NCBI RefSeq assembly: GCF_001194135.2
Contig: NC_069006.1
Coordinates: 22,964,976-23,028,975 of the forward strand
DNA length: 64,000 nt
Direction of reading: 5' to 3'
Source of the DNA: Octopus bimaculoides
Lineage: Eukaryota
The translations under genes and the position numbers were made by a program. A model generated the notes under the pieces. The model searched no databases. It saw only the letters and a program-made list of their open reading frames with translations, and was not told the origin of the DNA. Below, one piece after another: positions 4,441-50,295 of the stretch. The stretch's first letter is position 1; each line of letters starts with the position of its first letter.

Positions 4441-4585
4441 GACAAAGACTTTGAATTTGATGATCATGATCCCTTTTTAATGAGTGATGCGAGATCAAGA
4501 ACTTTTGTAGATGATGAAGATGACGTTGATGGCTCTGGTGATGAAGTTAGTGGTGACGGATCCTCTGTAAATAGAAATTATCCAG
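4441..4585 (+). CDS. HSPG2: Exon: perlecan domain I acidic / GAG-attachment segment
   Basis: ctttatccag|GAC...CCAG|gtaaga; DKDFEFDDHDPFLMSDARSRTFVDDEDDVDGSGDEVSGDGSSVNRNYP; two SGD motifs after an acidic cluster; phase 0 to 1. Confidence 0.9.
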
Positions 4586-5189: not shown

Positions 5190-5355
5190 ATTTTTACCGG
5201 ATAACATTCAAAGTACTATACCTTAGGGATTTACATGGATTACAAAATACATCTAGCCTACACTACCGTCGTATTTCAGAACAGATCCAAACATTTGTAT
5301 CTCAGCTCTACAACAACAAAGTTCGTGTCAACATTATTGGCTATACAGTCTCTAA
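5190..5355 (+). CDS. HSPG2: Exon: SEA domain, N-terminal half
   Basis: tcttttcag|AT...TCTAA|gtaagt; (D)FYRITFKVLYLRDLHGLQNTSSLHYRRISEQIQTFVSQLYNNKVRVNIIGYTVS; phase 1 to 2; the ORF track reports a different frame here. Confidence 0.85.
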
Positions 5356-6393: not shown

Positions 6394-6542
6394 TCGAAAT
6401 GCCTATGTTTCCATGGATTTAGGCACAAGTGAACTCACCAATGCAAAAGAAATCAAAAACACACTCTATTCAGAACTTTCAAGAGGTCGACTTGGAAACT
6501 TTACTGTGTCCACAGAAAATTTTAGTTTCAATGCACTTGGAG
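6394..6542 (+). CDS. HSPG2: Exon: SEA domain, C-terminal half
   Basis: catatttcag|T...GGAG|gtatag; (N)RNAYVSMDLGTSELTNAKEIKNTLYSELSRGRLGNFTVSTENFSFNALG; resembles the end of the vertebrate perlecan SEA domain as I recall it; phase 2 to 1. Confidence 0.88.
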
Positions 6543-13037: not shown

Positions 13038-14525
13038 ATGTATATATATATGTGTGGGTGTGTATGTATGTATGCTTGTATGTATAAATGTCAAATATAA
13101 TTTTTAGTGTCAAATTTTGTATATACATATATGTGTTGATGCTGAAACTTTGAATATTTCCCTTGAGTACATGATTAAGTTGTTTAATAATTGAAAGTGT
13201 GTAAGTAATAACAGTTTAAAATATCAGTTTCAAATTGTGTGTGTGGGCATACATACATATATATGTATATATATATAGGTATACATATGTGTGTGTGTGT
13301 GTACTAGCATGGTGCTATCAAGAGAGATCAGATATGAAGATATGAGTGAATGACCCTGATACACTTACCTCATTCTCAGTAAAAATATATGAAAATTAGC
13401 ATTATGTGTAGCATAGTTTCTTAACATCATGTGCTGTTTTGTTTTCTTTTACTAATTACTTAATTGCACTTAACTGTTGCACATTTGGAATGTGTGTGGC
13501 TTGTTTATGAGTGGTCAGTTTATTTTCATATTTTATTAATTGAAATATCAAGTATTACAAGAGAGTAAGTGCGTGTATGTCGTGTGTCGAGTGAGAGAGT
13601 GTAAATAAAAATATATTTAAAGTAAATGAAATTAAATTTTTCCCTACTAAAAATGCAGCCGTTTAATTTATTTAAACTGCCTTTTTCACTTAATTGCTGT
13701 GATGTTAGAAATGTGGAATTGTCTTTTTTTACGCTCCATCTAACCTGCTGTTTTTTGGTAGTTTTCTAATTTCTGTCTTTCTTTGATTTAACTCTTTTTG
13801 AATCTACGTGGATGTAACTTGCTCTTTCTCTGATGTATATTCTCTTCTTTCTCTTTTTTCTCTTCACTTTGCTCTTTCTATCTCTAACATAGAAGTTTTT
13901 CTGGTAATGTTTTCGTTTTCCAAGTGACACAAGAATACTGACCTTAGAAATTTGAGGATTATTTTGATTGAAGTTTATTTTGTTTTTCATTTCAACAAAA
14001 ATATTTTTAATTTTAAATTGGCAAAACTGATTTTTTAAAAAATTTTAAACTAAAATTAATTTACACAGAAAAATATGAATTACTGAAATTTTAAGAATAT
14101 CAAAATCAAAACTTCGAAGAGAATTAAAAAAAAAATGAAATTGAGATTTGAATAAATATATGTATATATATATATATATATACATTTCATGATATATTTA
14201 TTTGAATTTCTGAATTTGTTAGAATTTAATATTCAAAATTTTTCCGAAGTCGTTAGGTGAGGAAAACCAGTTTAGTAATATGAAATTTTGAATATATAAA
14301 GCAAAAAAAGAAATTTGATAAAAACTTGAATTAAAATTTCCATTTCTGATACATATATCTCTGTTCTCCACTCAACACTTTGGTTGTGCATGTCGAAACA
14401 TCTAGTTAGCATGCTATCATCTCTTTGCATGGTGTTTTTTCAGTAGTTGCTCAACTGACTAACGTGGTAATTCTAACCAAAAGAAAGCAAAAGAGATCAA
14501 AGAACTTGACTTTGTTTACTTCCAG

Positions 14526-15032
14526 ATATATATTGTCCACAGAAAGTTGGTCGTCAACCTGCTGAACTGACATGGACTGGGCCAAATCTCGCTCACCTCA
14601 TGGTGAACAACCTGTTCCCTTGTGACGGATATGTCACCAAATGGGCGTATTATGTTGCTGTCCCCACCAAAGAGTTCGCTGCTTCCATATGGCGTCCAGT
14701 TGATGAGTTTAAATTCTATCTCTTACACAAACAACTGATGCCAGCTACAAAAGTTGGATTCAACGAATTTACCTTACCAACTCCAGTCCTTGTTGAAAAG
14801 GGAGACTTCATTGGCCTTCACTATCCAAGAGCTGCTAAACAGGGAGCAATTGGTGGGTCAACGAGTGGTCGTAGTGACACACCTGCTGCCGAGTTATACG
14901 AAGCCTATTCTGGAGAACTGTTTGAAGAACTTATGACACCTCACGCTGAATTTGACATGAAATGGCTTGGTTTCCAGAAAGGCCAAAAAACATTTTCTAT
15001 TCAAGCTATCATGGATTATACTGGCATTGAGG
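14526..15032 (+). CDS. HSPG2: Exon: 169-aa domain of unknown function between SEA and the LDLa array
   Basis: tttacttccag|AT...GAGG|gtacag; TGACTAAC branch point at about 14456-14463; 507 nt, open, phase 1-1; DIYCPQKVG...NLFPCDGYVTKWAYY...SIWRPVDEFKFYLL...LPTPVLVEKGDFIGLHYP...QAIMDYTGIE. Confidence 0.85.
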
Positions 15033-21682: not shown

Positions 21683-21814
21683 GCCCTCACGTGCCACAGC
21701 CTGGGTCATGTTCTCCTGATGAATTCAAGTGTCGTAATGGTGCTTGTATTCAACTGAGATACTACTGTGATCATGAACTTGACTGTTCTGATGGATCTGA
21801 TGAAGAAAACTGCC
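21683..21814 (+). CDS. HSPG2: Exon: LDLa repeat 1
   Basis: catcaag|GC...TGCC|gtaagt; [44 protein letters not shown]; only the AAG acceptor is in phase; 132 nt. Confidence 0.88.
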
Positions 21815-22080: not shown

Positions 22081-22742
22081 ACTAGTACAACTCGGGTAAT
22101 ACTGAATTGTAGAATATCCAACTTTTTACTGTTTAGGAAAATAGGACTTACACAATGATGTCTGAGATTAACCACTGGGTAAGCACTAGTAAGCACTGTG
22201 TGTGTGTGTGCAAGCCTAAAGAAATCTAAGCTTTACTTAGGCCTGTATTCTGGGAAGCAGCTTCCCATACACCAATACATGGTCAGTCCTGACTGATGAA
22301 AACTTCAGACAATATTGATAATGATGATAAGCTGAAAGATGGCAAGCCAAGGTTTCACCCAGCAGTGGCTTGACAACAGCTGAATAGAAACTGTTTTAAC
22401 CGTTTTGTTACCATATTCCTGTTGAGCTGCTCTGTGTTTCTTTCAATTAATTTTAAATATAACAAAGAATTTAGTAAAATAACTTAGTTATCATTAAGTT
22501 AGTGTTAGGAACATAAATTTTGACTAAGGTTTGGTGGAAGATTTTAATTCAGAACTTTTGAAAACAAGACATTTGTACTTCAGAGCCAGAGTCGGTTTCA
22601 GGCAGGTTGATATCAAAAGAGTTAAGCTGTTGTAGGCATTCTGCTTTGTCTGTCTATAGAATGATATTTTTTAAAGAATGTGTCCCATACTAGTAAGTAA
22701 TGAAAAGAATTATGCATTTCATTAATGTTTTCTTTTTGACAG

Positions 22743-22853
22743 CAACTCGTTGCAGGGAAGATGAATTTAGATGTAGGAATGGAGACTGCATCCCATACAC
22801 AAAGTTCTGCAATGATGTATATGATTGTGCTGATGGAAGTGATGAGGAGTGTC
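22743..22853 (+). CDS. HSPG2: Exon: LDLa repeat 2
   Basis: ttgacag|CA...TGTC|gtaagt; TRCREDEFRCRNGDCIPYTKFCNDVYDCADGSDEEC; 111 nt, phase 1-1. Confidence 0.93.
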
Positions 22854-24414
22854 GTAAGTGTTACATTGTATTTTTTCTTAATGCTTTTCTCACTATTTGA
22901 TTATGTGTGCACCACACTCAGGGTTTTACAGTTACCAGTGAAGTAACAGAACATAACATCAGCAATTTGAGCGTTAGAAAAGCCCTCCTTTCTCATAAGA
23001 TAAAACTGCTGATTCACAACAGACAAGAGTCACATTAGACAGATTGGGTGTTGTAACAATTCTAAAACAAAAATCCTTTTGTTAGTCTGAAGATTTAAAT
23101 AAAACAAACACACACACATACATTTGTATATATGTGAGTGTATGTCATAATTTCTGCTTCTTTGACCGAGACCTTCTGAGCAAACCAGGATGATGAGACA
23201 TTTACATTCTTTGTGAGCATTACTTCCTCAGTCTCTGCTCTTTTGAAGTTTAATGGGAAAAACACATCCTTACTTGAAAGCAGGTAAAGATTAGTGACAG
23301 GTGGAATATCTGGCCAAAGAATACCACCTTCAATAAGTATCTGTCAACCCATACCAGCATTGGAAAAGACAGATGATTGAAGGACAGCACAGCAGTCTCA
23401 TAATCCAAGGCAATATGTAGTCTTTTACTGTTTTACTTGTTTTAATTGACTATGATTATGCAGAGGAAGTGCCTTGGAAAGTTTTTCTAATTGAACATAC
23501 TGACCTCTGTACTTATCTTAAAGTCTGGCACTCATTTTGTCGATTTCTATTTTATCAAAGTATTGAAGATATGGAACATAAACACAGAGAACTGTTTTTT
23601 AAGTGGTATCAATATAAAGACAGGCATAGAGAGGCAAAAACAATCAAACACACACACTCACACATGTGCACACGTGCACACACACAACACACACACACAT
23701 ACACATGTGTGTGTATGTGTGTGTGTGTGTGTGTGTATGTATATATGTATGTATGTATTGATAGTTGTATATGAATATATATAAAGGCACTTCAAAGAAG
23801 ATGTGGGAACAAAGTATGCTTTCAAATATGTTTTCCTTTCCAGTAAACTTAAGAATAAGAAAAAATCAAACTAAAATGTTTTTCCTTTCCCTTTCATTTT
23901 TTACCCACTCTCTGTCTGTCTGTTTGTCTCCGTTTTGTAATATATATCTGTGAACAACTGTGGTGCAAAGTTTCTGAGAAGATAGGAAATTCCTATTGAT
24001 TGTTTAGGTGTAGTATATTTTATAAACAAAGATAAACATTCATTGAAACAGAATGTATGATAGTCTGTACCATTCTGTTTCATTATAAAAGCTCTGTGTG
24101 TCTGTGTAGCTGTCTGAGTGTGTATGTGTGGGGGAACACCTAAAAAAATGTAAATTGTCTTTTATATGAAATGCTTTCCCATGTTAAGAAATGTCAATTC
24201 TTTGTAGCAAATGTGTTTCTTAAATAAAGATAAACATTCCTTCATTCTTTGATATTGACTGCTATACAGCTCTCTATCTGATTACACACACACACACATA
24301 TATATTTGTTGTGTGTGTATACATACACACACATACATATACAGACATGTATGTATACATGGAATACATGAATATATATATGTGTGTGTGTGTGCATATT
24401 ATGGATGTTAACCT

Positions 24415-24525
24415 TAACCATGCGGCCTTCGGTTCAGTCCCACTGCGTGGCACCTTGGTCAAATGTCTTCTACTGTTACTCTGGATTGATCAAAGCTTTG
24501 TGAGTGGTTTTGGTAGATGGAAAAC
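24415..24525 (+). mobile_element. SINE fragment
   Basis: GGTTCAGTCCCACTGCGTGGCACCTTGG...AAAGCTTTGTGAGTGG. Confidence 0.8.
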
Positions 24526-24955
24526 ATGTATGTGCAGACTCGACTTATTACCCAGTTGAGCAAGACCACCTGGTCCTTCGGATCCCTCAGCAGAGTTTAC
24601 TCCTTTGTAAGCATTCCACTCCAGTTCTCTAATCTGAGGATGACTTCTCCATGTCCTTCCACCATCTTGGAAGCCCCCCACTGATGAAGGCAAACAAATC
24701 AAAACTTCGAAGTTACTGTCAACCTTTACTTTATAAAAGTTAATAAATATTTACTCTACTAAAAAGTATTGAGCCATTTGCCAGTTTAATGTTTTCTTGT
24801 TTTTATAAATAACTTGACATAAAAACTAATATTAGTGTGTGTATATATGTATATATATATGTATACATATACATATATATAATACAAATAATAAATGAGT
24901 ATATGCATATATACGTTCATGTATGTACATACTTACATCTACCTGTATATATAGA

Positions 24956-25032
<77 letters not shown>

Positions 25033-25112
25033 TTAATGATTTTGCAGAAGATTTTGATTATTTTCCTGTTTGTTAAATTGCAATGGTACAATATTCTCTT
25101 TTTCATTTTCAG

Positions 25113-25226
25113 CTAAAACTTGTGGTGCTCATGAATTTAGGTGTAATGATGGATCTTGTATCAAAATCTCCCAGCGGTGCAATAGAAAAAATGACTGTTC
25201 TGATGGATCAGATGAAACAGGTTGCG
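25113..25226 (+). CDS. HSPG2: Exon: LDLa repeat 3
   Basis: ttttcag|CT...TGCG|gtatgt; [37 protein letters not shown]; 114 nt. Confidence 0.93.
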
Positions 25227-27014
25227 GTATGTATTTAACATTGAATCCTTTTTATTACTCTCTCTGTTTTCCCCTCTCAATCACACACACACATATAAAC
25301 ACACTGGCATTTATTATCAAATGGGACAGGCTGACATTCCCTGCTTGACAATGCTAGAAGTTGATTATATTGTCTGAAGTTAGCAATGTTAGTTTTTTTT
25401 GTTTTTTTTTTCTGAAGGCTGGGTGAGGGAGTCATTTTTATAGCCCAGTAGAAAGGAAGGCTTTTGTGCCTATGATCTTCCATGGCTCTGGGAGTCTGGT
25501 AAGATTGATAGGTTTGATGTTCAGTTTGAACAGTTCACAAGACAAGGATGATTCATAGTGTAAACTTAATAGTGGTGGTGGTGGTGGTGGTGGCAGTAAT
25601 GGACATGGTGACAGCAGCAGCAGTGGTTGTGGTGGTAGTAGTGTAGGTGCAGAATAGCTGAATGGTTATGATGTGTTCTTCACAATCACAAGGAACAAGG
25701 TTCAATCTTATTCCTATAGCCATGGATCGACCAAAGCCTTTTGTGTAAAATAAAGTAGATGTGAACTGCATTGGAAGCTTATCAGATGGATGTACCTGTA
25801 ACTCATATATATATGGAAATGTTTACAACAGTGTCCTTCTGGTTATAATGAAAGTTGGGTTACTGATTAGAAAGTTGCCTTAAATATTTAATGATAATAA
25901 CAAAAACATAAAGAAAAATATTTATAATAATAAAAATATTAATATTGTTTCTTTTCTTTCTAGGGAAGTATTAATTCCCATACATTCTTCATTGCAGCAT
26001 CTGAACTTGTTCTTATCTTTCGAAAATATTTAGAAAATATGTTTTGTCTATGAATTGATGAATATATAAATAACTATATTAATATATCAGTAGTGAGTTG
26101 TTTAATGCAAGAGATAAGTCTTCCAGCAAACTTGAGACCGTTGGAGCTGGTATCTTTACCTGGGATCAAACCAGCTCACATCGCTGATACAATTGAGAAA
26201 TGTATAGTGGCCTTTTCTATGACTTTGTATTTGAAAATAACAAATTTACTTTATNNNNNNNNNNNNNNNNNNNNNNNNNNNNNNNNNNNNNNNNNNNNNN
26301 NNNNNNNNNNNNNNNNNNNNNNNNNNNNNNNNNNNNNNNNNNNNNNNNNNNNNNNNNNNNNNNNNNNNNNNNNNNNNNNNNNNNNNNNNNNNNNNNNNNN
26401 NNNNNNNNNNNNNNNNNNNNNNNNNNNNNNNNNNNNNNNNNNNNNNNNNNNNNNNNNNNNNNNNNNNNNNNNNNNNNNNNNNNNNNNNNNNNNNNNNNNN
26501 NNNNNNNNNNNNNNNNNNNNNNNNNNNNNNNNNNNNNNNNNNNNNNNNNNNNNNNNNNNNNNNNNNNNNNNNNNNNNNNNNNNNNNNNNNNNNNNNNNNN
26601 NNNNNNNNNNNNNNNNNNNNNNNNNNNNNNNNNNNNNNNNNNNNNNNNNNNNNNNNTATATATATGCACACATGCATAAATATGTATGCATACAGGCATA
26701 ATATGTGCATAAAATGAATACCTACAAATAGGTATGTGTATATAAGTATATATTCTTAATAGAGTAAATCTTTTTAATTTTACAATATTATTGCTTCCTA
26801 GTTTTTATCTCTTTCTAACTTCTTATTCTTGACTTCAAATAAATGATTCCTCACCACCACCACCACCGTTCTCATTACACTCATCATATCTTAAACACCT
26901 TCTCAATTTCAGAACATAAATTAAGGTTTTTTTTTTTATTATTTGTTTGTTTTTATTGTCATTTTTTTTTTATTTTATTTTATTTCTCACTGTTGTCATT
27001 GCAACACTTTATAG

Positions 27015-27131
27015 CAACCACTCCATGTCGTCGTGATCAGTTTAGATGTGAAGAGGGTCACTGTATTGATGGCCGTTTTCGATGTGATGGAATCAACCAT
27101 TGTCCTCTCAATACTGATGAACTTGATTGTC
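27015..27131 (+). CDS. HSPG2: Exon: LDLa repeat 4 (atypical acidic motif)
   Basis: tttatag|CA...TGTC|gtaagt; TTPCRRDQFRCEEGHCIDGRFRCDGINHCPLNTDELDC; 117 nt. Confidence 0.92.
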
Positions 27132-27339
27132 GTAAGTGATATATAAAAAAAAAAAGCACAAAAATCAATCGAATTACTGATGGGTAATTTGATAACAATC
27201 AGAGGTTTCTTCCTCAAGATGAAATTTTGAAACTGTTTTTTTTTCTGCTGATGCCGATGCTAATGATGCTATCACTGCTCCTAATTATGGTTTGTTGTGG
27301 TTGTTGTTCTTGATGTTGATGTTATTATTCCTCTTGTTC

Positions 27340-28230
27340 TTGCTGCTCATGTAATTTTGTGACATGTTCTTGTCTATATGATCCTTCATCTTTTCATACT
27401 CGTGTGAACATGCACTCTTTCTTCCTCCCTTTTCACCTTCTACCTTCACTACAATTCTTCTACCTTCCACTGCCACTATTTTCACAATCCTTTTCCTTTG
27501 TTTTGTCTTCTGTCTTTACCCTTTGTTTTACACCTCTGTTTTGCCTGCCACCAACATTGTTTTATACTGTTATACCACTATCTTTATCTTTTTCTACTAG
27601 TTTTCTTTCATCCTCTTTATTACCTTTAGTCTAAATTACCTATATTATTCCTCCTTTCACACCTCTCCTTTACCTTCCACTCTTTATCCTCTTCCTCTAT
27701 GTTTCTATTATCCACTATATATGTTCACTCTCCCCTCAATCATCTATACCTTATATTTATCTGTTTTTGTCTTTCACACTGTCAGTGTCTCTATTACACC
27801 TCTCACTTTCTGTTGAACTCTTCAACATTTTTGTTTGCCTTCCAATGTTTTATCCTTAATTTTCCTGTATTTTGCCCTCCATTCTGTTACCCCTGTTTCA
27901 TCCTTCAAACTCTCAGTGTTAATTTACATCTTGTCCTGTTTTACTTTCTATCACTTTAGTTTACTCTTCATCTGTTTCACCATCAATTAACTCTGTTTTA
28001 CTCTATACACACTCTGTGTCCAACTATCAAATCTATCTTTCTCTCTTTTAACTTTCATCTCTTCAGTTTTGTTCACTCTCAGTTACTTCTGTCTTACTCT
28101 TCACATCATATTCCATTTTCTCTTTCCACCCCTGTTTCCTCTCTTTTACTCCTCCCAAATTACTGACTTTATGTTATCCTGCAATACCTCTGTCTAAACT
28201 TCCTAACTCTGTTGTTCTATTTTTATCCAT
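27340..28230 (+). repeat. ~900-bp pyrimidine-rich low-complexity tract
   Basis: Strong C/T excess on the + strand, very few G. Confidence 0.8.
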
Positions 28231-31200
28231 TCCGCTGGCGTTCCATGCTCTAGAGTACAGAATTTTTTGTTACAATATTTCAATGTAACAGATACTTCTG
28301 TATGAAGATCATGTGGAATATTAATATCCCTTGGTAGTGCAGGACAGAGCAGGACTATATGTTACAATATTGGTTACAATATTGCAACAAATAGTTTTGA
28401 ATGTGTACACTTACAAAAAATGTGAATATCCATCTTTTGTGAGGATTATTTCACTTTAATGAAGAAACAACAAAAATTAAATAATGACTTCATTTTTTTA
28501 AATGTTCAATGCTTGTTTTTGCTTCCATTTCAAAAGTTTCAGCACTTTGCACTTCCTTTGGACTGCACACAGTTTACTGTTACCAATTTTGACTGTTTTA
28601 TGAACATTTCAGCACTTTGCACACCGTTTGGACCACAACCCCTTGTTACCAAACATTTACATTATGTTATTTAAGAAAATCACTTTGCACCTGTTTTGTT
28701 TAAATATTTTTTCACGTTGTTTAACTTTTTTTGTTTTGTTTTTGAAATTTGTATTGAATTTCTGACTTCTGAATATCTGAACTTTTCTTAATGGAGATCT
28801 ATATTTTATTTATTTCTCCTTTTTTTTTTTTTATCTGTGAGAAACCATTTCTGCATGCTATTTTTCTGAAATGACTTCAATACACTTTAATGCACTCACT
28901 GCACCCTGGTTTTGCAGTTTTCATTCTCAGGAGCACTTTTCTGCCTTTCTCATAATATTCTGCTATATAACTTTCACATAATATTCTGCTACTTTTTAAT
29001 AGTTGCTCCTATATTGTGGTTCCCAAATGGTGTGGTGCAAGATGTAGCTAAGCATCCTGTAATAATAATAATAATAACATTATATTTAAAACATGAGTAA
29101 AATACAAATTGAAATACTAAATAGAAAGTTTTCATAACATTGCTTCATTTATTGAATAAAGAATCAAATAGTTAATTTATAGCCTAAAATATATAATATG
29201 TATTTTTAATACACTTTTTTGACTTCATGTATAAACTGCACCAAATTATTTTCATTTCATCTAAAGTGCACCACAAGCAAATATGTTTGGAAACCACTGT
29301 TGTTATATGTCTAATACTCTTTGATTTTTGGTTATGCTCACACACGTGATATTCATTTCTCTCTCTTACTAGTTCAATCCAATTTGTTATCTCACTTGTT
29401 CAGTTTTTTTTAAAACCTTGTCAAGATTTCATTTGTCCACGAGTAGTAGAACATTATTATCCTTGCTCCTTCTCAACTATGTAGATATTTGATGAAAGGT
29501 GCTCAGTAGATTCAGATAATTTAAGAATTAATCATAATAAAAGCAAGGATATTTGATAAGTTGATGAGAAAGGAAGTCAAGTTGAATAAAAAATGAAATT
29601 CTGAGTAAATAAGAGTAAGTGAACCATGAGTTAATTGTTCGTATTTTGTGTGCCAGTTTCAAGGAAAATTAAAAGCTATAGCACTGCATAGTTTCCTTTT
29701 AGTTATTTATTCAAAATTATTTTATATATATATATATATATTAACATTTCAACCAATATATAAACATTTATTTTTATTATAAATCATAGCTTAACAATAA
29801 AATAATCATTTGATTAATGAATTGTAAAATATGCAAAATATTTGATTCTAAATAATTGTATATAACTGAGGGAGAAACTCCTATTAATACAAATCAAATT
29901 CATTGAATATGAATGATAAAATGTTCATTTATAAGAAATGCTGTAAAGGTCTTCATAAAATAAGCTTTGAAATTCTAGTTTTTTTTTTTGTTTTTTTTGA
30001 TATAGTGATAATTTTTCTAAAGTCATATTCTGTTTATTTACTAAATTTTAATAGACTTGTTCTCCAAATAGCTAAATTCTTATCTTAAAGTTCTAATTAA
30101 CTTATCAAAGAAGGTAAGATGTTCAGGAGAAACATAAATTCCTTTGTGTTTGTTTTGCCTTGTGTTTAAAACACATGAGCACCAAAACTGCTTGGCTCAA
30201 AGTACAGTGTTCTACTGCCATGTATAGGTTGGACATCAACAGATGTTTGCCATTGGATCAAGAGGCTAAATATATATTTACATTCTGAGGTTGACAATAT
30301 CCTATTGTTTAGTATTTTGAGCAAGTATCTTTTACTACAGCCTTGGATTGACTCATGTCTTGTTTGTGGAACTTGGTAAATAGAAACTGTGTTAAAGCCT
30401 AATGGCTGAATTATACCAGTGAGTCAAAGGTTCAAATTTGAAACTGAGTCTTGCTGACTCTGTCTGAGAATTATTTTTTAAGGGTACATGTGTCTGTAAT
30501 TTATGCACTTGTTCAATGAGGTTGATAGTTTGGTTGATTAAACAAACTCAAAAATTCAGACTCAGATGCATTCCAATGACTAAAATGATTAAAAGAGTAA
30601 ATGCATGTGTAATTAGACTCTGTAGATAATGAGCTATATGAACTAATGGTTCTTTTTCCTAGTTGCTTATAGAATAATCTAATATGAATTATTTCATTAA
30701 TGCATAGAAATTCTAATATTCACTTACCAGAGTTTAATTAATTGTGAGAAAAAATTGTATATGCTCATAAACTATTTTAACTGTTATATTTAATTATTTT
30801 TACTTAATAAATTCACCTGAATAAAAGCACTAATTCTACTGTAGTGTGACTTTAACAGTATCTCAATTATATAGAAATCTAGTTTATATATATAACATCA
30901 AATGTATCTGCTTCTAATTTATATTTCTAACTAATATATAGCTTTTACAATCAGAATAACGAATGTGTCTTAAAGTAGTTTTTTTTTTTTTAAATCTAAT
31001 GTTCATTAAATCAATATCATAGCTGCAATATTAACTTAGAATATTGCATTTAATCCAGGTTAATATTTTTCAATAACTAACTGCTTTGACTTCTAAAGCA
31101 TTATTATCTACATATGAATATATCTAATTATGTTAATATTCCATCTGATGCAAATATTATACTTTTTCTTAATATTATATATCTGCATTGTTACATATCA

Positions 31201-31249
31201 AAGAACTTTTATATTCTAAAAAAATATCCTAAATTGTATTTCATTTTAG

Positions 31250-31372
31250 CAAACCGCACTTGTGCTGCAAATGAATTCTCCTGCAAAGTTGGCCCATGTA
31301 TTGCAATAAGTTTGGTCTGTGATAACAAAAGGGATTGTGAAGATAGATCTGATGAAACTCCAGATGCCTGTG
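31250..31372 (+). CDS. HSPG2: Exon: LDLa repeat 5
   Basis: attttag|CA...TGTG|gtaagt; NRTCAANEFSCKVGPCIAISLVCDNKRDCEDRSDETPDAC; 123 nt. Confidence 0.93.
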
Positions 31373-31662
31373 GTAAGTATCCTGCCTACTGTTGCAATAA
31401 ATTTTTAAAGCCAGCTGTTTTCATGTTACCTTTACCTAATCCCACTCCCCTCATTCATTTCTCTATCCTCTTCTCATCATTCATACTATGTCCGTTGACC
31501 TCACCTCACTCAGAGTGCCTGCTGAAAGCTGTACAGGCCATGTACAAAGACACTGTCTTTGTACAATCACAGGTCAGCGAAGAATTTGATGTGTCAAAAT
31601 TTGAAATTTCAATTGTTGTTGTTGTTGTTCTCATCATCATCATCACCATTATCTCTCTTCAG

Positions 31663-31776
31663 CCTCAGTATGCAAACCAGGTGGTTTCAGATGTCGTGAT
31701 GGAAGCTGTATTGACGAGTCCTTCCACTGTGATCGTGTACCTCAATGCCGAGATGGCTCTGATGAGATTAACTGTG
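31663..31776 (+). CDS. HSPG2: Exon: LDLa repeat 6
   Basis: ctcttcag|CC...TGTG|gtacgt; SVCKPGGFRCRDGSCIDESFHCDRVPQCRDGSDEINC; 114 nt; a second in-frame acceptor lies 6 nt downstream. Confidence 0.92.
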
Positions 31777-31916
31777 GTACGTAAATCATTTAGTGTGTTG
31801 TGTGTGTGTGAAGTCAAATTTTTGTTCTTTTGGGAGAGGAAAAAATCCCCTTGATCTTTGATTTTGAATATTCTGGTGTCCTCATTTTTTAAGTAAAATG
31901 TTTTTTAATGGTTCAG

Positions 31917-32030
31917 GTACTCAATGTTTATCTGGAGAGTTCCATTGTAAAACTGGAGAATGTATTCAAGGTGCTAAAAAGTGTGATGGTCGTGCAGATT
32001 GCTGGGATAGTTCTGATGAAGAAAATTGCC
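31917..32030 (+). CDS. HSPG2: Exon: LDLa repeat 7
   Basis: ggttcag|GT...TGCC|gtgagt; [37 protein letters not shown]; 114 nt. Confidence 0.93.
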
Positions 32031-32200
32031 GTGAGTATTTTTCTTTTAATTATTTCTTCATTTTGGCTATCACCATTAAATAGTAACGTTAACATTTGTT
32101 ATATGGTTTTACATTATTCTTTCTAGTACTACCTTACCCATTTCTCTCCTCACTTCCTCATTTCACTCTAATCACTTTGTATTCCTGTCTCACTTCTTTC

Positions 32201-32254
32201 TTCTTCACACCCTCATTCTTCTTCACACCCTCATTCTTCTTCACACCCTCATTC
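32201..32254 (+). repeat. 18-bp tandem repeat, 3 copies
   Basis: TTCTTCACACCCTCATTC x3. Confidence 0.9.
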
Positions 32255-32688
32255 TTCTTCTTCTTATTCTTTTGATCACATTGTCCTGAACAAACAGAGA
32301 TAACATTGAGTAGTGAGGACTCTTGTTTTGCTGAGTACAAGGTAACCTCACTAGCACTGGTACCACAATAAAATGATCCCAGTTCACCCATTAAAATAGT
32401 TTGTGGAAGAATATAGACAATGTAGGTAGGGCCAAGATAATCCCTTATGTCTTGTCTTATCAAGAACATGACAACTCCTAGTGGCAGTACCATGATAAAA
32501 TTCACCCAATGCATGCTGTAAAATAGTTACTGTTAGGAATGGAAAAATCTAGCTGTAGAATCCATGCCAAAAATAGAATGTACAAGTGAAACATGATCAC
32601 TTGATTTATCTAGGAATGTAGCAACTCTGAATATGATCTGACTTGTAGCAGGAAGACTCATCCAACTTATGCCATCATGGAAATTCAG

Positions 32689-32719
<31 letters not shown>

Positions 32720-34222
32720 ACTGATGATATATACTCTTTATAATTGTCTAAGTTGTATTGAATTTTGTCTGCATTCACTATATTTACCAATGATAAAATT
32801 GCCACTGCTATGTCAAAAAAAAAAACCTTGAAGGAATCTAATTATACATGAATCTAATGTATGTTATCTAATAACTGTGAATTCAACATACATATGCTTA
32901 TGCATAGACCTTTGTGTTAGGATATTTGGTTTATATATTTCTTACCATTATATGCTAGGTACAAGTAATTAATAGCTGTTACTTCTGATATCTTCTTCAT
33001 ATTCCTGCTGATAAAAAAATGTCTGCTCTTACCCTACAAAGCCTTATGGTAGTTATTGTGGTAGACGAAATATAGTACAAATGATTTTTAACCATTTCAA
33101 CACCTTAATTATGGTAATGGTACTTCTTTCTAAAATAGGTGCAAAGTCAAAATTTCAGGGAGAGGTGTCAGTTGATTGAATCAGTAGCGAACAGATGTAA
33201 AGCAAAGTTGATGATAGTGGAATTTGAATTCGGAATGTAAAGTGTTGTAACTGGTTACTGCAATGCACATTGTCTGACGCTCTAATGGTTCTGCCAAATA
33301 ACAACAGCAATAATATATGATGATGATGATGATTAACAACAGTGCAGCAAAGCCTCTGATTCAAGTGCAACTATAGAGTTGATTATATTGACTCAAGAAC
33401 TCAACTGTTTATTTTATTGAGTTTTGGGGGGTTGAAACAAATAAAATCAAACATGGCAGGATTTGAATGCAAAACATCAAAAGGGATGCAATAAAATACT
33501 GCAAGACATTTTTTTTTGACACTTTGCCATTTCTGGCATCGTACTGTAACCATATATAGAGACTATCCTCTATCCTCATTGCAAGAGGTGCTCTCATTGT
33601 GTCTTTTTCGGAGTTAGTGGGTTGTGAGAGGTCAAGTACCTAGCTTTATAAGACAATTAAACAATAATTTCAATTATTTGCAATATTTATCCTGGACAGC
33701 ATCCAAAATAAACCACTTGACTGTTTGATGTCAAGTCAACCCTTGCATATTCTCAGCTTCTGTCCCACAAATGTACTGTCTCCCTATCTCTGCTCCTTAG
33801 TGCTAGCTGGTCTCATGACATCTCCTCCTCTCAGACACTCCCAACTCTTTCATCTCGCTTCCTCTCACATATTTTTCCTGTAGCTGTTGACTTAAAACTG
33901 CTTTGGAAAGCTTCCATCCAGTTCATTGCGCAATTTAACACTGCCAACTGAATCTTGAGTATCTTTTGTGGTGTCTGCTCTGTTCTAAGTATTCAGAGCC
34001 CATCTGTGATCAGACGATAATTTCTTTCTTGCTACCAGTCTCCAAGGCCCTGAAAAGGCTTATAGGTGCTCCTTTTTTTCTTATTTGATTAAGCAATACA
34101 ATTTTTTTAAATGTTTGTGTCTTTGTTTATATCAGTTTGAATGATTGTATATGACCTCATGTCTGCCTGTGTCTGTTTTGTCTTCATTTGTATAATTATT
34201 CAATTGTATTCTTTGGTTCCAG

Positions 34223-34342
34223 TATTCTGCAAGAAACGAGATGAATTCCTATGCCGTGAGGGAACTGTGTGTCTTCATATTTCTCAAGTCTGTGATGAAG
34301 TCATTGACTGTCCGGACAGTAGTGATGAGACAAATTGTCGTT
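34223..34342 (+). CDS. HSPG2: Exon: LDLa repeat 8
   Basis: gttccag|TA...CGTT|gtatgt; FCKKRDEFLCREGTVCLHISQVCDEVIDCPDSSDETNCR; 120 nt. Confidence 0.92.
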
Positions 34343-36825
34343 GTATGTTTCTGCTCATAGCATCCATTTACAATAGTGTTTCATCAGAAAAACTAAATAT
34401 GACAGTGGAAAAAAGAAAGAACTTGGGGAACATTGTTAATGTTGTTATTGTTGCATTAAACATAATGATGGGCATGTGGATTACAGTTCTGTCTAAATTG
34501 ATAAAAATACATTTTCCACTGCTAAAGGAATGCATTATATTGAATTAAGTACCATACTTCAAGACATAGTGTTTGCAGTAAATACAAAAACTACTGCAGC
34601 AATAACTTCAGGCCTTGGTTGGCATGAAATTCACCTTAAGATGTTTGCTTCACAAGTTCTTTGTTCTGGATTGTTTAATCTAATTATATGGCATCTTAGG
34701 CAAATGGATTCTACCCTTGCCTCAAGTTGACCAAAAATTTGTGGTTGAAATTTTTATAGACAGAAAGTGTGGGAGTACACTATTGGGACTGTTACTACTC
34801 GTAATTTGTTACCCATTTTAATACCATCACCTGGCCTGTGTGGGTCTTTGGCAGTATCTACTCAATTGCAAACATTCAGTTCAGTTTGAGAATAACTTCC
34901 TCCCTTCCACAAACCAGTCATAAAGGCTCAGAAAAGAGTTGTAGGTGCTGCCTTTACTCTTCTAATAAAAAACCATTAATCCCTTCCTCTATTACTTCAT
35001 TCCTAAGTTCTTGGAGGCAAACAGATTTGTTATGTATTACCCCTTGAGAGAGTACTATTCATTATTGTTTGTTCTCAGTATTACTGACCTTGACTGCATT
35101 TTACTGCATAAACAACCACTTATAAGAACAAAATAGGATGAGTGCACAGCTAAGCTTAAAACTGAGAAGACCTTTTGCATAAAGTGGTCCTATCAACTAC
35201 AGAGAAGTCACACCTGTTTTATTGTAATGTGTTGGTTAAGTCTAATGTTAACTAATGTTTTTAGACCCAAATTAGCTCTGGTTAGACATAGCCATGATCA
35301 AACAAATTCCAACTGTGGCCACACCTCTTGAATTTCAGTATAAAATAACTCCTATTCAACTGCTATTTGGCCCACTCAGCACATCTATAAATACACACTG
35401 ATTTGCATAAGCAGTGTTAGTCTGGTAGCTACGTCAATTAATTAAATACCAATAATTTATATATGTGTGCAGACGTATGCTTGTGTATATATGTATACAC
35501 ACAGACACACACATGCACACACCATTCTTTTAGTTTAATTGACAATCTATATTTTACCCCCAGTTTGAAGGGCATCACTGAATGTAATTACATCTTGCAG
35601 AAAGGTGAACTGATCACAATTTCCCCATTTTCAGATTTTCTCTACACTTTAGAGGTTTCAAATCCAATTTGTCTCAGCCATTATAAAATCTAGTTTTTTT
35701 CCACTGTTCATATTTCTTTTTCATCCTGTACCATTACATGATACCCAGCATGACACTCAACCAGCCAACCATCTGTCAATCTATCTATGCATTTGTCTGT
35801 CTATCTCATGGTCAACCAGTCAGCTTTGTTTGCCACAATGTCTGTCTGAGAGATGTACATTCAGTTTTAGTCTGCATCATACTCAACCCTTCATTCATGA
35901 CTTCTTTCTCATTTCTTGCTGACTGCCTGACAGAACCATACATTACTGGCTCATTTTATTGACCATTCTTTGCATGATTCGATAATATATATATATGGAT
36001 GTATTTATGTATATATAGCGAGTGAGATTGATTAAAACTGCTACATGATGAATATTTGGTTTATGTAGTTAAAAAGAGATGGAATGAAAATGGGGAGTTC
36101 ATTTATTTTCATGTCTTTTGGGTTGCATTGATTCATATATTATTATATATTTTGAAAATGTTTTTAGCCTTATACATTGGAAGAAATGTTCCAATTGCTT
36201 GTGTCTAAGTATGTTTAATATTTTAAAGTTTATTTTTCATAATATACATAGTTATCAATTTCAATAATTTAAATAAATAACTTAGTTATTTGAGTTGCAT
36301 TCCTGGACAAGGTACATAACTCTGCTTGCTTCAGTTATTTGCCTGACTTAATTAGTGGCTGAAAGGGTATAAGAAATGGCATAACTTCACCTTGTAAAGC
36401 CATCCCTTGTCCTGTTTGCATGAAAAATAGAAAAAAATAAACGGATGTAAACCAACCCCTCAAAAGTAAATAAGAAAATGTTGTATGCTTTATCAAAGAG
36501 AGTCTAAAGCATTTGAATGTACTCCTTTGACTTGTTACTTATTCTCTTTAAGTGAACCATATAAGTAAACATATCTAATTTCTGCTACAGTTTTGAAACT
36601 AGTATTTCTCCCTTGGTTTTGTAATAGCATTGTCATTCTTACCACCTACCCCATCCCTCGCTGAATCCCTCAAAAATCTGCATGGCCATTATATGGAAGA
36701 ACTTCTTTACCTTGACTGTAGAACTGATTCATTGGTTTAACTTGTATTTCTTGTCGTCTACTAAAATGCTGTTTGTAGATTAGTTAATAACATTCTATAT
36801 CTTCTACATTATTATGTATGTACAT

Positions 36826-36869
<44 letters not shown>

Positions 36870-37621
36870 ATTCTTTTCTTTTAGGTCTCAGTCAGTGGAC
36901 TGTGGTACAAAACAATGTGAATAAATAAACATTACATTTGACAGAGTAATCTGAATGCAGAATGGCTAATGGCTCATCTGCAACAGGCAAGCTACAAAAA
37001 TGGATTTACTTAGTCCAACATTGAGTGCATATAGGTGCAGAGGGATCTTCAACAGACTAAAATTTCATGATTAAAACTTCATATTCTCTTATTAAATCCA
37101 CTTGGCATTCAGTTGAATTTTTTTGAGCCAATGTTGTACACATTTCTCTGTGTCTTCTTTGTACATAACATGGTCAGCAGAAGTACATGAATTTTTGCAT
37201 TGGAAAACATCCCAAAGAGTGTTCCCTGTTACACAGTCACACATGGCATGGTGAGAGCAGATGTATCTCCATGTGTTGAGTGTCATTTCACCTTTATTAG
37301 TTGACTAATGTTTATCCACTTAACCCAATTTGCTACCATTTCCATTGTATCTCCCTAACACTGATGTACACACATGCACACACACATATGCACATTCACA
37401 TATGCCTTAATTTGACAATGATTTATACAAAATGCTGTTATTAATAATTTCTTTACATTTCTCTTTTTTGTAAATGATATTTATCATGAAATTTCTCTCT
37501 TCTAAGCACAGATTGCAATTCCCATCAAAATAATTATATTTTCTTCTTTTCAAGAATCAATAAATTCAATGTGATTGTTATTTCAAATACTTATCTCGTT
37601 TTCATTTTTCTTGTTCTTTAG

Positions 37622-37735
37622 CCACAGTTTGTACTGCTAACCAGTTCCAGTGTGATGGCCGCTGCTTAGACTTGTCTTTGATATGTAATGGTCAAATTGA
37701 TTGTAGAAATGGGTTTGATGAGTCAGAATGTTCAG
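37622..37735 (+). CDS. HSPG2: Exon: LDLa repeat 9
   Basis: tctttag|CC...TCAG|gtaatt; TVCTANQFQCDGRCLDLSLICNGQIDCRNGFDESECS; 114 nt; absent from the ORF track. Confidence 0.92.
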
Positions 37736-37899
37736 GTAATTATTTCAAGAAAACCCTTATTATATCTCAAACTCCATCACAAACTATCAATATATCCATC
37801 TGTATAAGCCCAAGAAAAATACTTCTGCATGTTTACTTGACCTGCTAGAAAAAGCAGCCATATCTCCTTCTTATTATATCCTACCACACGCACCACTAC

Positions 37900-37957
<58 letters not shown>

Positions 37958-38533
37958 ATATACACACTCAGAGTAAAGGGTAAAGACCCCCTTCAGTCAT
38001 GAACCTTAGGAGATAGGCCCCTTAGATACTAACATGGGCTGCCATATATGGATTCTGATGGTGCAGGGTTCCATTTGCCATCAGGCAAGCTGGAAACCTG
38101 GTCAGTCTGCCACTGACTACAAGCAACTTTACACGATTTATTGTACTCCATTTATAGATTCAACTTTGTTGGAACTTCTGTTTTAAATATACTTTAGATT
38201 GGCAAAAGTGATAGAGTGCTGGAAAAAATTATTTAGTTACCACTCTTTACATTCTGAGTTTAAATCTCACTATCATTTTTCTGAGTTTGGTAGAGAAATG
38301 TAGTAGGTAAAATACTGGAGAAGATTTAATCAACTACACCTTCTCCTAAAATTTGTAGCTTTGAGCCACTGTCAGAAATATAGAACTAGGATCTATTGAA
38401 TTTTCCAATAATGCACCTTAAATGTGAATGGAATTATAATTAAAGACTACCCTAACAGAATTTTCCATTCCATTCCATTTACTGTGGAATTAGAAAACTT
38501 ATTTTTGCATTTGTCAAATTCCTATTTTTCCAG

Positions 38534-38641
38534 AATGTAATGAACAACAGTTTACATGCAGAAATGGTGACTGCATTCAAAAATCAGCAGTTTGCAATGG
38601 AAGACAAGACTGCCGTGATGGTTCTGATGAACAGGACTGCG
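38534..38641 (+). CDS. HSPG2: Exon: LDLa repeat 10
   Basis: tttccag|AA...TGCG|gtaagt; [35 protein letters not shown]; 108 nt. Confidence 0.93.
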
Positions 38642-38652
38642 GTAAGTATACA

Positions 38653-39026
38653 TTCTTTTACTCTTTTACTCTTTTACTTGTTTCAGTCATTTGACTGCGG
38701 CCATGCTGGAGCACCGCCTTTAGTCGAGAAAATCTACCCCAGGACTTATTCTTTGGAAGCCTAGTACTTATTCTATCAGCCTCCTTTTGCCGAACCGCTA
38801 AGTTACGTGGACATAAACACACCAGCATCGGTTGTCAAGCGATGTTGGGGGGACAAACACAGATACACAAACACACACACACATACATATATATATATAC
38901 ATATATACGACGGGCTTCTTTCAGTTTCCATCTACCAAATCCACTCACAAGGCTTTGGTCGGCCCGAGGCTATAGTAGAAGACACTTGCCCAAGGTGCCA
39001 CGCAGTGGGACTGAACCCGGAACCAT
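38653..39026 (-). mobile_element. Near-full-length copy of the same SINE, antisense, 5'-truncated
   Basis: Reverse complement aligns with about 3947-4320 at high identity, tail included; starts about 12 nt after the LDLa10 donor. Confidence 0.92.
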
Positions 39027-40108
39027 ATGTATATTTTTTTAATTGTGTGTTGTTTTCTTAACTCAGTTTGATACCAATCTACTTAAGATTGCATTTGGTT
39101 CTATAATACAGACTATCTCATTTAGAAATGTTCATATTGTAATTAATTTACCCCAAATCATAGAGTTATTTTTTTTTTTAATTTAATTACTTTTATTTTA
39201 CATTATGGATTTTGTGAAGAATAGCCTTATTGGCACAGGATGGTTTTCAGTGTGACCCCATTGACTCATTGCATTTGTAATGCAAAGAAAGACAAGCATA
39301 CTCATGTTTGTCTAACTCTGGCTGAACAAATACCATAAAGAATTTTTGTTTAAAAGACCCAGTTTATAAATTTCTTTTTTTTACTGACCAATATATATAT
39401 ATTGGCAGGAGATACAAAAATGTGATGGGTATCTACATAGTTTCTGTTTACCCATTCTCAAGATATTCATCAGCTTGAGTCTATGGTAGAAGATAACTAA
39501 GTTGCTGTGTGGTAGCCTTGAACATGGAACTCTGTGGTTGAAAATTGCACTAGTTTATTACACAGCCAAGCCTGCACCCTTTAACCACACAGGCTTCAGG
39601 AACCTTCTGTAAAGTTATGTTCCAAATAGTTTAACAATAAAAGTTAATAGTTTTACTTTATCCCTTCAAATTCTCAATTATTTTAACAAGCTGATTAAAA
39701 CACATTTTAAATTTCAATAGAAACATAGTCAAAGATAGATTAACACAATCTCCCTCTACCCTATCCTATTAAAACTTAATTAATTTTACTAGCATTGTAT
39801 TTTTTTTTTTACCCTTTTCATGCTAGCCTACTTGAGACTGCCCTTATTTCTATGATACAAAACCTGTTTTCAAGTGTTCATATTTAAATTGAAACCTCCC
39901 ATCACAGTTCTAAGAAAAAAAAATTTAGTTCTGCTCCAAACATTAGCTTTAATGGAAAAGTTATTTTACTAAATCCCTTGAAACTTTTATTTTCAAAATT
40001 AATTGAAACACATAAGTAGAATTTTTAAATATACGATAATAAAATGATTCGTTCTTTTTAAACTATTCCCCGCATCACTATTATTTCTATAAATCTTTAT
40101 TCTTCCAG

Positions 40109-45976: not shown

Positions 45977-46019
<43 letters not shown>

Positions 46020-47875: not shown

Positions 47876-47927
<52 letters not shown>

Positions 47928-48610: not shown

Positions 48611-48660
<50 letters not shown>

Positions 48661-50255: not shown

Positions 50256-50295
<40 letters not shown>

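What the first reader, a model, noticed from the sequence alone, without database searches (positions are those of the whole stretch)
14526..15032. Unknown 169-aa domain inserted as one intronless phase 1-1 exon between SEA and the LDLa array
Seen: a 507-nt open exon with a TGACTAAC branch point, valid splice sites and symmetric phase 1 ends. It is about three times larger than any other exon and intronless, while the smaller SEA and Ig domains are each split in two. The protein has alternating hydrophobic beta-strand patterns and 2 Cys. Established: vertebrate HSPG2 goes from SEA to LDLa repeats with no such domain. Inference: an exon-shuffled beta-sandwich module, possibly glycan- or ligand-binding and possibly lineage-specific. 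The motif order (G-Y-V-T-K-W-A-Y-Y...SIW...GFNEFTLPTPVLV..GD...HYP) reminds me of the mostly bacterial DUF4082 family; that is recollection only, but if real it would raise capture from an intronless or horizontally acquired source.
Basis: partly seen in the sequence, partly recalled or inferred. Interest (0 to 1): 0.85.

Follow-up and report, generated by a model that had tools for sequence, protein, structure and literature searches.

The report
Extra beta-sandwich domain in invertebrate perlecan
The 507-base exon is real and encodes an uncharacterised beta-sandwich domain that mollusc and ribbon-worm perlecans carry between their SEA domain and LDL-receptor repeats; it is distantly related to the mostly bacterial DUF4082 family but was not recently captured from bacteria.

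Summary
Observation confirmed. Window 14526-15032 (+) is an open, phase 1-1 exon with AG/GT splice sites. It joins in frame to the SEA exon ending at 6542 and the first LDLa exon starting at 21683. The spliced product of five exons aligns end to end with the scallop perlecan-like protein XP_060073482.1 (E 1e-59).

The domain is not peculiar to this genome. It occupies the same position in annotated perlecan-like proteins of bivalves, gastropods and a nemertean. It also occurs in other secreted architectures in annelids, nemerteans and a brittle star. 163 cluster representatives match it.

AlphaFold2 gives a confident all-beta model (pLDDT 96.6). Its nearest folds are phage tail and receptor-binding jelly-roll domains.

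The window copy has no Pfam hit, but some relatives reach the DUF4082 threshold. Bacterial proteins are significant distant homologues.

Recent horizontal or intronless capture is not supported. The single-exon, phase 1-1 structure is shared with a bivalve and a nemertean, and the closest relatives are all animal.

The most likely function is an extracellular glycan- or ligand-binding module; this is inferred, not shown. Interest is moderate.

The parts
4441..4585 (+). Exon encoding the acidic N-terminal region with Ser-Gly motifs (DGSGDE, SGDGS) of the type used for glycosaminoglycan attachment; ends in phase 1
   Evidence: Sequence read. Weak but collinear tblastn matches to the N-termini of mollusc perlecan-like proteins. 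Part of the end-to-end alignment.
5190..5355 (+). Exon encoding the N-terminal half of the SEA domain (phase 1 to 2)
   Evidence: sequence, AG/GT. Pfam SEA E 8e-4 on this piece alone. Aligned to the SEA region of P0008.
6394..6542 (+). Exon encoding the C-terminal half of the SEA domain (phase 2 to 1)
   Evidence: sequence. tblastn matches to the SEA C-terminal region of five orthologues..
14456..14463 (+). TGACTAAC branch-point-like motif about 64 nt upstream of the exon
   Evidence: Identical in the related-species contig L001.
14526..15032 (+). The finding: a single phase 1-1 exon encoding a 168/169-aa DUF4082-like beta-sandwich domain with conserved Cys3 and Cys32
   Evidence: open frame, splice sites. 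(163 homologous cluster representatives). (family alignment). (AF2 pLDDT 96.6). (single HSP, collinear with orthologues). (no indels, conserved splice sites in a related species).
21683..21814 (+). First LDL-receptor class A exon (phase 1-1), spliced directly to the domain exon
   Evidence: sequence. Pfam Ldl_recept_a 47.7 bits on the spliced product. In the scallop protein the first LDLa starts 7 residues after the domain.
22697..52473 (+). Array of at least 13 further LDLa exons, roughly one repeat per exon
   Evidence: Cys-pattern scan of open frames. tblastn with P0008 and P0151.

Best explanation
Exon 14526-15032 is a genuine coding exon of the perlecan (HSPG2-like) orthologue of a spiralian animal, probably a mollusc.

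It encodes one complete extracellular domain of about 165 residues. The domain is a jelly-roll-type beta-sandwich whose N-terminal segment is probably pinned by a Cys3-Cys32 disulfide.

The domain belongs to a sizeable animal family that has no Pfam model of its own. The family is a divergent branch of the DUF4082-like superfamily, which also includes bacterial surface proteins and resembles phage tail receptor-binding domains in fold.

The domain was already present between SEA and the LDLa array in the common ancestor of molluscs and nemerteans, on a symmetric phase 1-1 exon. It is therefore an old, exon-shuffled part of spiralian perlecan rather than a recent insertion.

Inferred mechanism: it acts as a lectin/CBM-like binding module next to the glycosaminoglycan-bearing N-terminus, adding a glycan or matrix-ligand binding site to perlecan. 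Because both ends are phase 1, skipping the exon would keep the frame (G + GC = Gly) and give the vertebrate-like SEA-LDLa arrangement. Regulated inclusion is therefore possible but untested.

Shown: the exon, its fold prediction, its homologues, and its position and gene structure in other species. Inferred: the disulfide, the binding function and constitutive inclusion.
For: Exon and junctions:
- Open frame and splice sites.
- The spliced five-exon product aligns without junction gaps to scallop XP_060073482.1 residues 32-407, E 1e-59.

Same position in other perlecan-like proteins:
- Ylistrum: SEA 90-182, domain 198-363, then 18 LDLa, Ig, laminin B and laminin G.
- Also Tubulanus, Bulinus, Mactra and Elysia.

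Family size, conservation and fold:
- 163 representatives at E<=1e-3 and 57 at E<=1e-10.
- G8, C32 and D93 are invariant.
- AF2 pLDDT 96.6, pTM 0.91, all-beta.
- Fold neighbours are phage tail or minor-tail proteins. The best is Caulobacter phage Kronos, E 4.2e-6, TM 0.61. Also Bxb1 tail tip TM 0.55, Cwp84 lectin-like domain and CBM32.

DUF4082 and bacterial links:
- DUF4082.
- Bacterial homologues: Ca. Entotheonella LamG protein with 3 copies (hhalign probability 95.7%, E 9.5e-9) and an Acidobacteria PMT_2 protein with 2 copies.

Gene structure and constraint:
- Single exon and phase 1 are conserved in Mactra and Tubulanus.
- Against a 94%-identical related genome the exon has no indels, while the flanking introns have four. 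Splice sites are identical. There are about 12 synonymous and 13 non-synonymous codon changes, giving omega of roughly 0.3-0.4 by hand count.

Partner domains in paralogues are often carbohydrate-binding: F5/8C, SUEL lectin, AbfB, LamG, PAN.
Against: - No transcript evidence for this species was available. The only close relative found is a genomic contig.
- The function is inferred only from fold neighbours and domain partners. No PDB structure matches at E<=1e-3, and no ligand-binding residues could be mapped.
- The window copy departs from the family consensus at several well-conserved positions (YYR to YYV, WRQ to WRP, LPR.G.NWANL to LTWTGPNLAHL). Its binding properties could therefore differ or be lost.
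- The C-terminal perlecan hallmarks (laminin B, Ig array, laminin G) lie outside the window. Orthology rests on the N-terminal 366 residues and the LDLa array.
- An assembly gap (12656-12973) lies in the upstream intron.
Confidence: 0.65

Rival explanations
1. Recent capture: the exon was acquired by this lineage from a bacterial (DUF4082-bearing) or other intronless source and inserted into the SEA-LDLa intron.
For: - The domain is on one large exon, while neighbouring domains are split or small.
- There is real remote homology to DUF4082 and to bacterial proteins.
- Fold neighbours are phage tail proteins.
Against: - The same domain occupies the same position in bivalve, gastropod and nemertean perlecan-like proteins.
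- Intron position and phase are the same in Mactra and Tubulanus.
- Bulinus has introns inside the domain.
- The best matches are all animal (E 5e-34 to 1e-20). Bacterial ones are at 1e-15 or worse, cover only residues 17-110, and lack the Cys pair.
- Composition and codon evolution look like ordinary host exon sequence.
Confidence: 0.03
2. Ancient horizontal origin: the whole animal family derives from a bacterial DUF4082-like gene transferred into an early bilaterian or spiralian. It then gained an N-terminal disulfide-stapled extension and was exon-shuffled into perlecan and other matrix proteins.
For: - In named hits the family is seen only in Spiralia plus one echinoderm, and in bacteria including the sponge symbiont Ca. 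Entotheonella.
- From memory only, Pfam DUF4082 is mostly prokaryotic.
- Bacterial copies lack the Cys pair.
Against: - Only about 30 of the 163 hits could be given a taxon name, so apparent absence from other animal phyla is not established.
- The patchy distribution is equally explained by an old domain lost in several lineages.
- No phylogeny could be computed, because the script machine was lost.
Confidence: 0.15
3. The domain is a passive structural spacer or an oligomerisation/protein-protein module, not a glycan binder.
For: - Jelly-roll folds also include TNF/C1q-like oligomerising domains and PHR domains, which appear among the weak PDB matches.
- No binding pocket was demonstrated.
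- The window copy has lost several consensus residues.
Against: - TNF-like matches have a TM-score of only 0.26-0.30, against 0.52-0.65 for phage receptor-binding or CBM-type domains.
- Paralogue partners are enriched in lectin-type domains.
- Strongly conserved polar and aromatic motifs (NN.F.C.G, W.YYR, VWRQ, GDFIG.HY) exceed what a spacer needs.
Confidence: 0.2
4. The exon is an optional cassette, alternatively spliced, rather than a constitutive part of the protein.
For: - Symmetric phase 1-1 ends mean that skipping keeps the frame.
- The branch motif is rather distant (64 nt) and the donor is the weaker GTACAG.
Against: - All orthologous gene models examined include the domain.
- Sequence constraint and intact splice sites are seen in a related species.
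- No RNA data either way.
Confidence: 0.2

Closest known systems
Pfam PF13313 DUF4082 (domain of unknown function; mostly prokaryotic surface proteins, by my recollection)
   Same: Collinear sequence similarity covers most of the domain: family member residues 32-141 against profile 25-132 of 143. Some family members reach the curated cut-off (29.3 and 36.6 bits against 28.4). The consensus scores 15.4 bits. Both are uncharacterised.
   Different: The window copy and 31 of 37 family members do not match the model. The animal family has an extra N-terminal segment (C-P-x-x-V-G-R-x-P-x-x-L-P) and a conserved Cys pair that is absent from the bacterial relatives. It occurs in secreted metazoan mosaic proteins on a phase 1-1 exon.
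Perlecan / HSPG2 domains I-II of vertebrates (SEA followed directly by LDLa repeats)
   Same: Same order of an acidic Ser-Gly region, SEA and an LDLa array. The orthologues continue with Ig, laminin B/EGF, an Ig array and laminin G.
   Different: An additional 165-aa domain lies between SEA and the first LDLa. The LDLa array is much longer: at least 14 repeats in the window and 18-21 in the scallop and snail proteins, against 4 in human by established knowledge.
Distal beta-sandwich domains of phage tail fibre, minor tail and baseplate proteins (e.g. Caulobacter phage Kronos A0A386KRM5, mycobacteriophage Bxb1 tail tip 9d93, Douge gp20 8zdp)
   Same: These are the best structural neighbours of the AF2 model: Foldseek E 4e-6 to 1e-3, TM 0.52-0.65 over 160-180 columns. 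Such domains typically mediate host-surface recognition.
   Different: Sequence identity is only 9-17%. No solved structure matches at E<=1e-3. The biological context is entirely different.
Galactose-binding-like jelly rolls (CBM32, F5/8 type C)
   Same: General beta-sandwich topology, extracellular use, and co-occurrence with an F5/8C domain in a Tubulanus paralogue.
   Different: Structural matches are weak (TM 0.3-0.35, partial) and there is no sequence match. Not a member.

Membership tests
Perlecan (HSPG2 / trol / unc-52 orthologue group) | N-terminal region collinear with accepted or annotated perlecans (Ser-Gly acidic segment, SEA, LDLa) | tested here: met
   The 366-aa spliced product aligns end to end with XP_060073482.1 residues 32-407, E 1e-59. 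LDLa scores 47.7 bits. SEA scores only 17.6-23.8 bits, below the cut-off of 26.4, but the SEA passes in orthologues.
Perlecan (HSPG2 / trol / unc-52 orthologue group) | Array of LDL-receptor class A repeats (domain II) | tested here: met
   At least 14 LDLa exons on the + strand between 21.6 and 52.5 kb.
Perlecan (HSPG2 / trol / unc-52 orthologue group) | Laminin B / laminin EGF domain III, long Ig array (IV), laminin G / EGF domain V | not testable with these tools
   These parts would lie downstream of the 64-kb window. They are present in orthologues P0008, P0012 and P0014.
Pfam DUF4082 (PF13313) | Score at or above the curated gathering threshold (28.4 bits) against the family HMM | tested here: not met
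   The window peptide has no Pfam hit even at E<=10. The family consensus scores 15.4 bits.
Pfam DUF4082 (PF13313) | Homology to the family by transitive or profile evidence | tested here: met
   6 of 37 aligned relatives hit PF13313, best E 6.6e-6. Members 7 and 23 give 29.3 and 36.6 bits, and the Tubulanus perlecan copy 26 bits. All are collinear from profile position 25/26. These relatives match the window copy at E 1e-22 to 1e-26.
Pfam DUF4082 (PF13313) | Shared three-dimensional fold with a bona fide DUF4082 domain | not tested
   No structure or model of a bona fide DUF4082 protein was on hand. Only the AF2 model of the window copy was made.
Carbohydrate-binding modules / lectin-type jelly rolls | Demonstrated or residue-level predicted sugar-binding site | not testable with these tools
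   Only fold-level resemblance and domain-partner association.

The most novel reading that the evidence does not exclude
The animal family is the product of an ancient transfer of a bacterial or phage DUF4082-like adhesin domain into an early spiralian or bilaterian genome. It was then fitted with a disulfide-stapled N-terminal extension and spread by exon shuffling into perlecan and a dozen other matrix, lectin and receptor architectures. This would give spiralian basement membranes a glycan-recognition function that vertebrate perlecan lacks.
Probability: 0.12. Interest if true: 0.65.

Novelty: new variant of a known kind. Interest (0 to 1): 0.4.

Why it matters
Perlecan's N-terminal architecture is usually described from vertebrates, flies and nematodes. 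The one perlecan-evolution paper I read (PMC4398486) does not cover lophotrochozoans and mentions no such domain.

The results show that spiralian perlecans carry an additional conserved folded module next to the glycosaminoglycan-bearing end. The module belongs to a family of about 160 sequence clusters that Pfam mostly fails to annotate.

That gives curators a clean seed for a new family or an extended DUF4082 model, namely alignment A1 plus a pLDDT-96 model. It also gives matrix biologists a specific testable element: what the domain binds, and whether the exon is ever skipped.

It is not a case of recent gene transfer, and the sequences already sit in public gene models. The value is therefore annotational and evolutionary rather than surprising.

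Tried and rejected
Searches that found nothing useful:
- Direct Pfam and PDB sequence searches with the window peptide found nothing.
- A profile search of PDB sequences gave only noise, with LexA at E about 1.
- The word-indexed homologue search was nearly blind to this family, giving 1 hit and then 5 hits. The exhaustive HMMER search was what opened the family up.
- NCBIfam gave nothing relevant.
- Two literature searches on perlecan evolution and domain architecture turned up no paper describing the domain; two of the listed papers were opened and say nothing about it.
- The literature has only two passing mentions of DUF4082.

Steps that failed or were blocked:
- The exact ORF of the window is not on record elsewhere.
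- The run accessions of the related-species contig appear in no paper. The source organism therefore stays unidentified.
- The scallop locus was too long to fetch.
- The script machine was lost. As a result no phylogeny, formal dN/dS or automated exon maps could be made. Mactra and Tubulanus exon structure was instead read from ORF lists and sequence, and substitutions were counted by hand.

Ideas rejected:
- Serglycin hits are artefacts of my Gly-Ser linkers.
- The FG-GAP/PAAR protein P0095 (9 short stretches) is probably a repeat-motif artefact (GDF.G), not a family member.
- ORFs in the two flanking introns have no Pfam domains, so there is no nested gene.
- The many-frame 'ORFs' at 12.5-13.1, 26.1-26.7 and 43.8-44.4 kb are runs of N.

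Full report
**1. The observation**

Reading the sequence shows a pyrimidine-rich tract and an AG at 14524-14525. An open frame follows from 14528 for 168 codons. A GT lies at 15033-15034.

The exon is therefore 14526-15032 (507 nt), with two leading bases and one trailing base, so both ends are phase 1. The peptide has exactly two cysteines, at residues 3 and 32. TGACTAAC lies at 14456-14463, about 64 nt upstream of the exon.

The upstream exon ends at 6542 with a single G before GT. The downstream exon begins at 21683 after an AG and reads in frame into an LDLa repeat.

In DNA of 32.6% G+C, an open run of this length is not expected by chance. The only other ORFs of at least 200 aa are artefacts of N runs, or cover LDLa exons.

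**2. The gene around it**

A cysteine-pattern scan and tblastn with orthologues show at least 14 LDLa exons on the + strand from 21.6 to 52.5 kb.

Upstream, weak but collinear matches to mollusc perlecan N-termini, together with direct reading, give three exons:
- 4441-4585: an acidic region with DGSGDE and SGDGS motifs.
- 5190-5355: the N-terminal half of SEA.
- 6394-6542: the C-terminal half of SEA.

All phases are compatible: 1, then 1-2, 2-1, 1-1 and 1-1. The conceptual product of these five exons (366 aa) aligns end to end, with no gaps at the junctions, to residues 32-407 of P0008. P0008 is XP_060073482.1, 'basement membrane-specific heparan sulfate proteoglycan core protein-like' of the scallop Ylistrum balloti. 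The alignment has 33% identity and E 1e-59.

Pfam finds LDLa (47.7 bits) and a sub-threshold SEA (17.6-23.8 bits against a cut-off of 26.4) on the window product. In the scallop protein the first LDLa starts seven residues after the domain. No exon is therefore expected between 15032 and 21683, and ORFs in both flanking introns have no Pfam match.

**3. The domain is a family**

The word-indexed search found only one close relative. This is a 1-kb genomic contig from a sequencing run, 92% identical at the protein level.

The exhaustive HMMER search found 163 cluster representatives at E<=1e-3, 57 at E<=1e-10 and 5 at E<=1e-30. Named members are listed.

Perlecan-like proteins with the domain between SEA and LDLa, or just before LDLa:
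- Ylistrum (4494 aa: SEA 90-182, domain 198-363, 18 LDLa, Ig, laminin B, laminin G).
- Tubulanus polymorphus, a nemertean.
- Bulinus truncatus.
- Mactra antiquata.
- Elysia marginata.

Non-perlecan secreted proteins:
- Owenia: Kringle x4 - domain - Methyltransf_FA - AbfB; domain - SUEL lectin - CUB; domain - VWA.
- Tubulanus: domain - F5/8C - ShK x3.
- Lineus: two copies plus PAN.
- The brittle star Amphiura: domain - HYR x6.
- Unnamed contigs with Sushi/HRM combinations.

A 37-sequence alignment, A1, shows invariant G8, C32 and D93, and a near-invariant C3. It also shows the motifs NN.F.C.G, W.YYR, VWRQ and GDFIG.HY.

**4. Fold**

AlphaFold2 with A1 gives pLDDT 96.6 and pTM 0.91, with about twelve strands and almost no helix.

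Against the PDB, nothing reaches E<=1e-3. The best matches are jelly-roll domains of phage tail and baseplate proteins (Douge gp20, Bxb1 tail tip at TM 0.55), a cyanophage capsid protein and the Cwp84 lectin-like domain. CBM32, TNF-like and PHR domains match much more weakly.

Against predicted viral structures, ten matches have E<=1e-3. All appear to be phage proteins; those that carry a name are tail, minor-tail or fibre-type proteins. The best is E 4.2e-6 with TM 0.61.

The domain is thus a beta-sandwich without a solved close relative. Its nearest structural analogues are surface-recognition modules.

**5. The DUF4082 question**

The window copy has no Pfam hit at all. However:
- 6 of the 37 aligned relatives hit PF13313, with best E 6.6e-6.
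- The family consensus hits at 15.4 bits, residues 33-100 against profile 26-91.
- In a scan of concatenated members, member 7 gave 29.3 bits over residues 32-141 against profile 25-132 of 143. Member 23 gave 36.6 bits, and the Tubulanus perlecan copy 26 bits. The cut-off is 28.4.

Independently, bacterial proteins are significant hits. One is a Candidatus Entotheonella LamG-like protein with three copies (E 3.6e-15; hhalign probability 95.7%, E 9.5e-9 over 107 columns). Others are Acidobacteria PMT_2-domain proteins with two copies.

The bacterial copies align only from about residue 17-26 onwards and have Thr where the animal family has Cys32. By Pfam's own criterion, though, this copy is not a DUF4082 member. 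The animal family is a distinct branch with an added, probably disulfide-stapled, N-terminal segment.

**6. Recent capture is not supported**

- In Mactra the whole domain lies in one open frame. It is preceded by ...tttcag|AT, which is the same split GAT codon and phase 1 as in the window.
- In Tubulanus the domain is likewise one open frame, preceded by ...tttacag|GC and ending ...TAC G|GTGAGT, again phase 1-1.
- In the gastropod Bulinus the domain is interrupted by at least two introns.

The single symmetric exon is therefore ancestral to molluscs plus nemerteans, not a mark of recent arrival. All of the closest relatives of the window exon are animal.

Compared with the 1-kb contig of a related species, the exon has no indels, while the flanking introns carry four. 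The splice sites and the TGACTAAC motif are identical. By my hand count there are about 12 synonymous and 13 non-synonymous codon changes, giving omega of roughly 0.3-0.4. That is moderate purifying selection.

**7. Mechanism**

Shown: a folded, conserved, secreted-context beta-sandwich located immediately after the GAG-attachment/SEA region.

Inferred: it is a binding module, most likely for a carbohydrate or other matrix ligand. The reasons are as follows:
- Its structural neighbours are receptor-binding or CBM-type domains.
- Its paralogues are combined with lectin-type domains (F5/8C, SUEL, AbfB, LamG, PAN).
- A bacterial relative is fused to a glycosyltransferase-family membrane domain.
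- Its conserved positions are polar or aromatic rather than merely hydrophobic core.

I put roughly 0.4-0.45 on glycan binding specifically, about 0.2 on a purely structural or protein-protein role, and the remainder unknown. Exon skipping would preserve the frame, so regulated inclusion is possible but untested.

**8. Novelty and verdict**

The sequences exist in public gene models, and the fold class and the DUF are known. What appears undescribed is the family itself as an animal extracellular module, and its fixed place in spiralian perlecan. It is absent from most Pfam annotation and from the literature I could search.

I rate it a new variant of a known kind, with interest 0.4. The source organism could not be identified. 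Three assembly gaps lie in introns of the gene.

Noticed in passing
window 12656-12973, 26255-26656, 43938-44395: Three runs of N (assembly gaps of about 320-460 bases) lie inside introns of the gene. The first is flanked by (TA)n and (TG)n microsatellites. They generate spurious ORFs in all six frames in the ORF list.
   Followed up: yes
window 40093-40290 and 41160-41429 (also 38494-38691): Two LDLa exons are nearly identical, including their flanking intron sequence (translations [46 protein letters not shown] in both). This indicates a recent tandem duplication of an exon-plus-intron unit of about 1.07 kb. A third, more diverged copy lies 1.6 kb upstream.
   Followed up: no
window 42380-42865: Intronic minisatellite with a 28-nt unit (TTACTTAATTACATCTCACAATGTTTCTG), about 14 copies at 84% match, with higher-order periods of 57 and 111.
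   Followed up: no
window 4441-4585: The N-terminal exon carries Ser-Gly dipeptides in an acidic context (DDEDDVDGSGDEVSGDGSS), the classical glycosaminoglycan attachment type. It is conserved in position with scallop and clam perlecan-like proteins and precedes the SEA domain as in vertebrate perlecan domain I.
   Followed up: partly
L003 (Bulinus truncatus contig JAGDYQ010000358.1) and proteins P0010, P0014, P0151: Three annotated gene models on one Bulinus contig each contain a nearly identical copy of the domain. One is a 669-aa SEA-domain-LDLa x6 'hypothetical protein'. They may be tandem paralogues, haplotigs or a fragmented perlecan model. In this snail the domain is split by at least two introns.
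   Followed up: partly
P0002 (Owenia fusiformis CAH1786992.1), residues 407-572 and 976-1025: This annelid protein combines four Kringles, the domain, a Methyltransf_FA (farnesoic acid O-methyltransferase-type) domain, an AbfB arabinose-binding domain and the start of a second copy of the domain. It is an unusual mosaic suggesting a carbohydrate-directed secreted protein.
   Followed up: no
window 31090-32080: Three LDLa exons are packed within about 1 kb (31.25, 31.67 and 31.92 kb) with very short introns. Elsewhere in the array introns run to multiple kb. One 254-codon open frame runs through the first exon and its intron.
   Followed up: no
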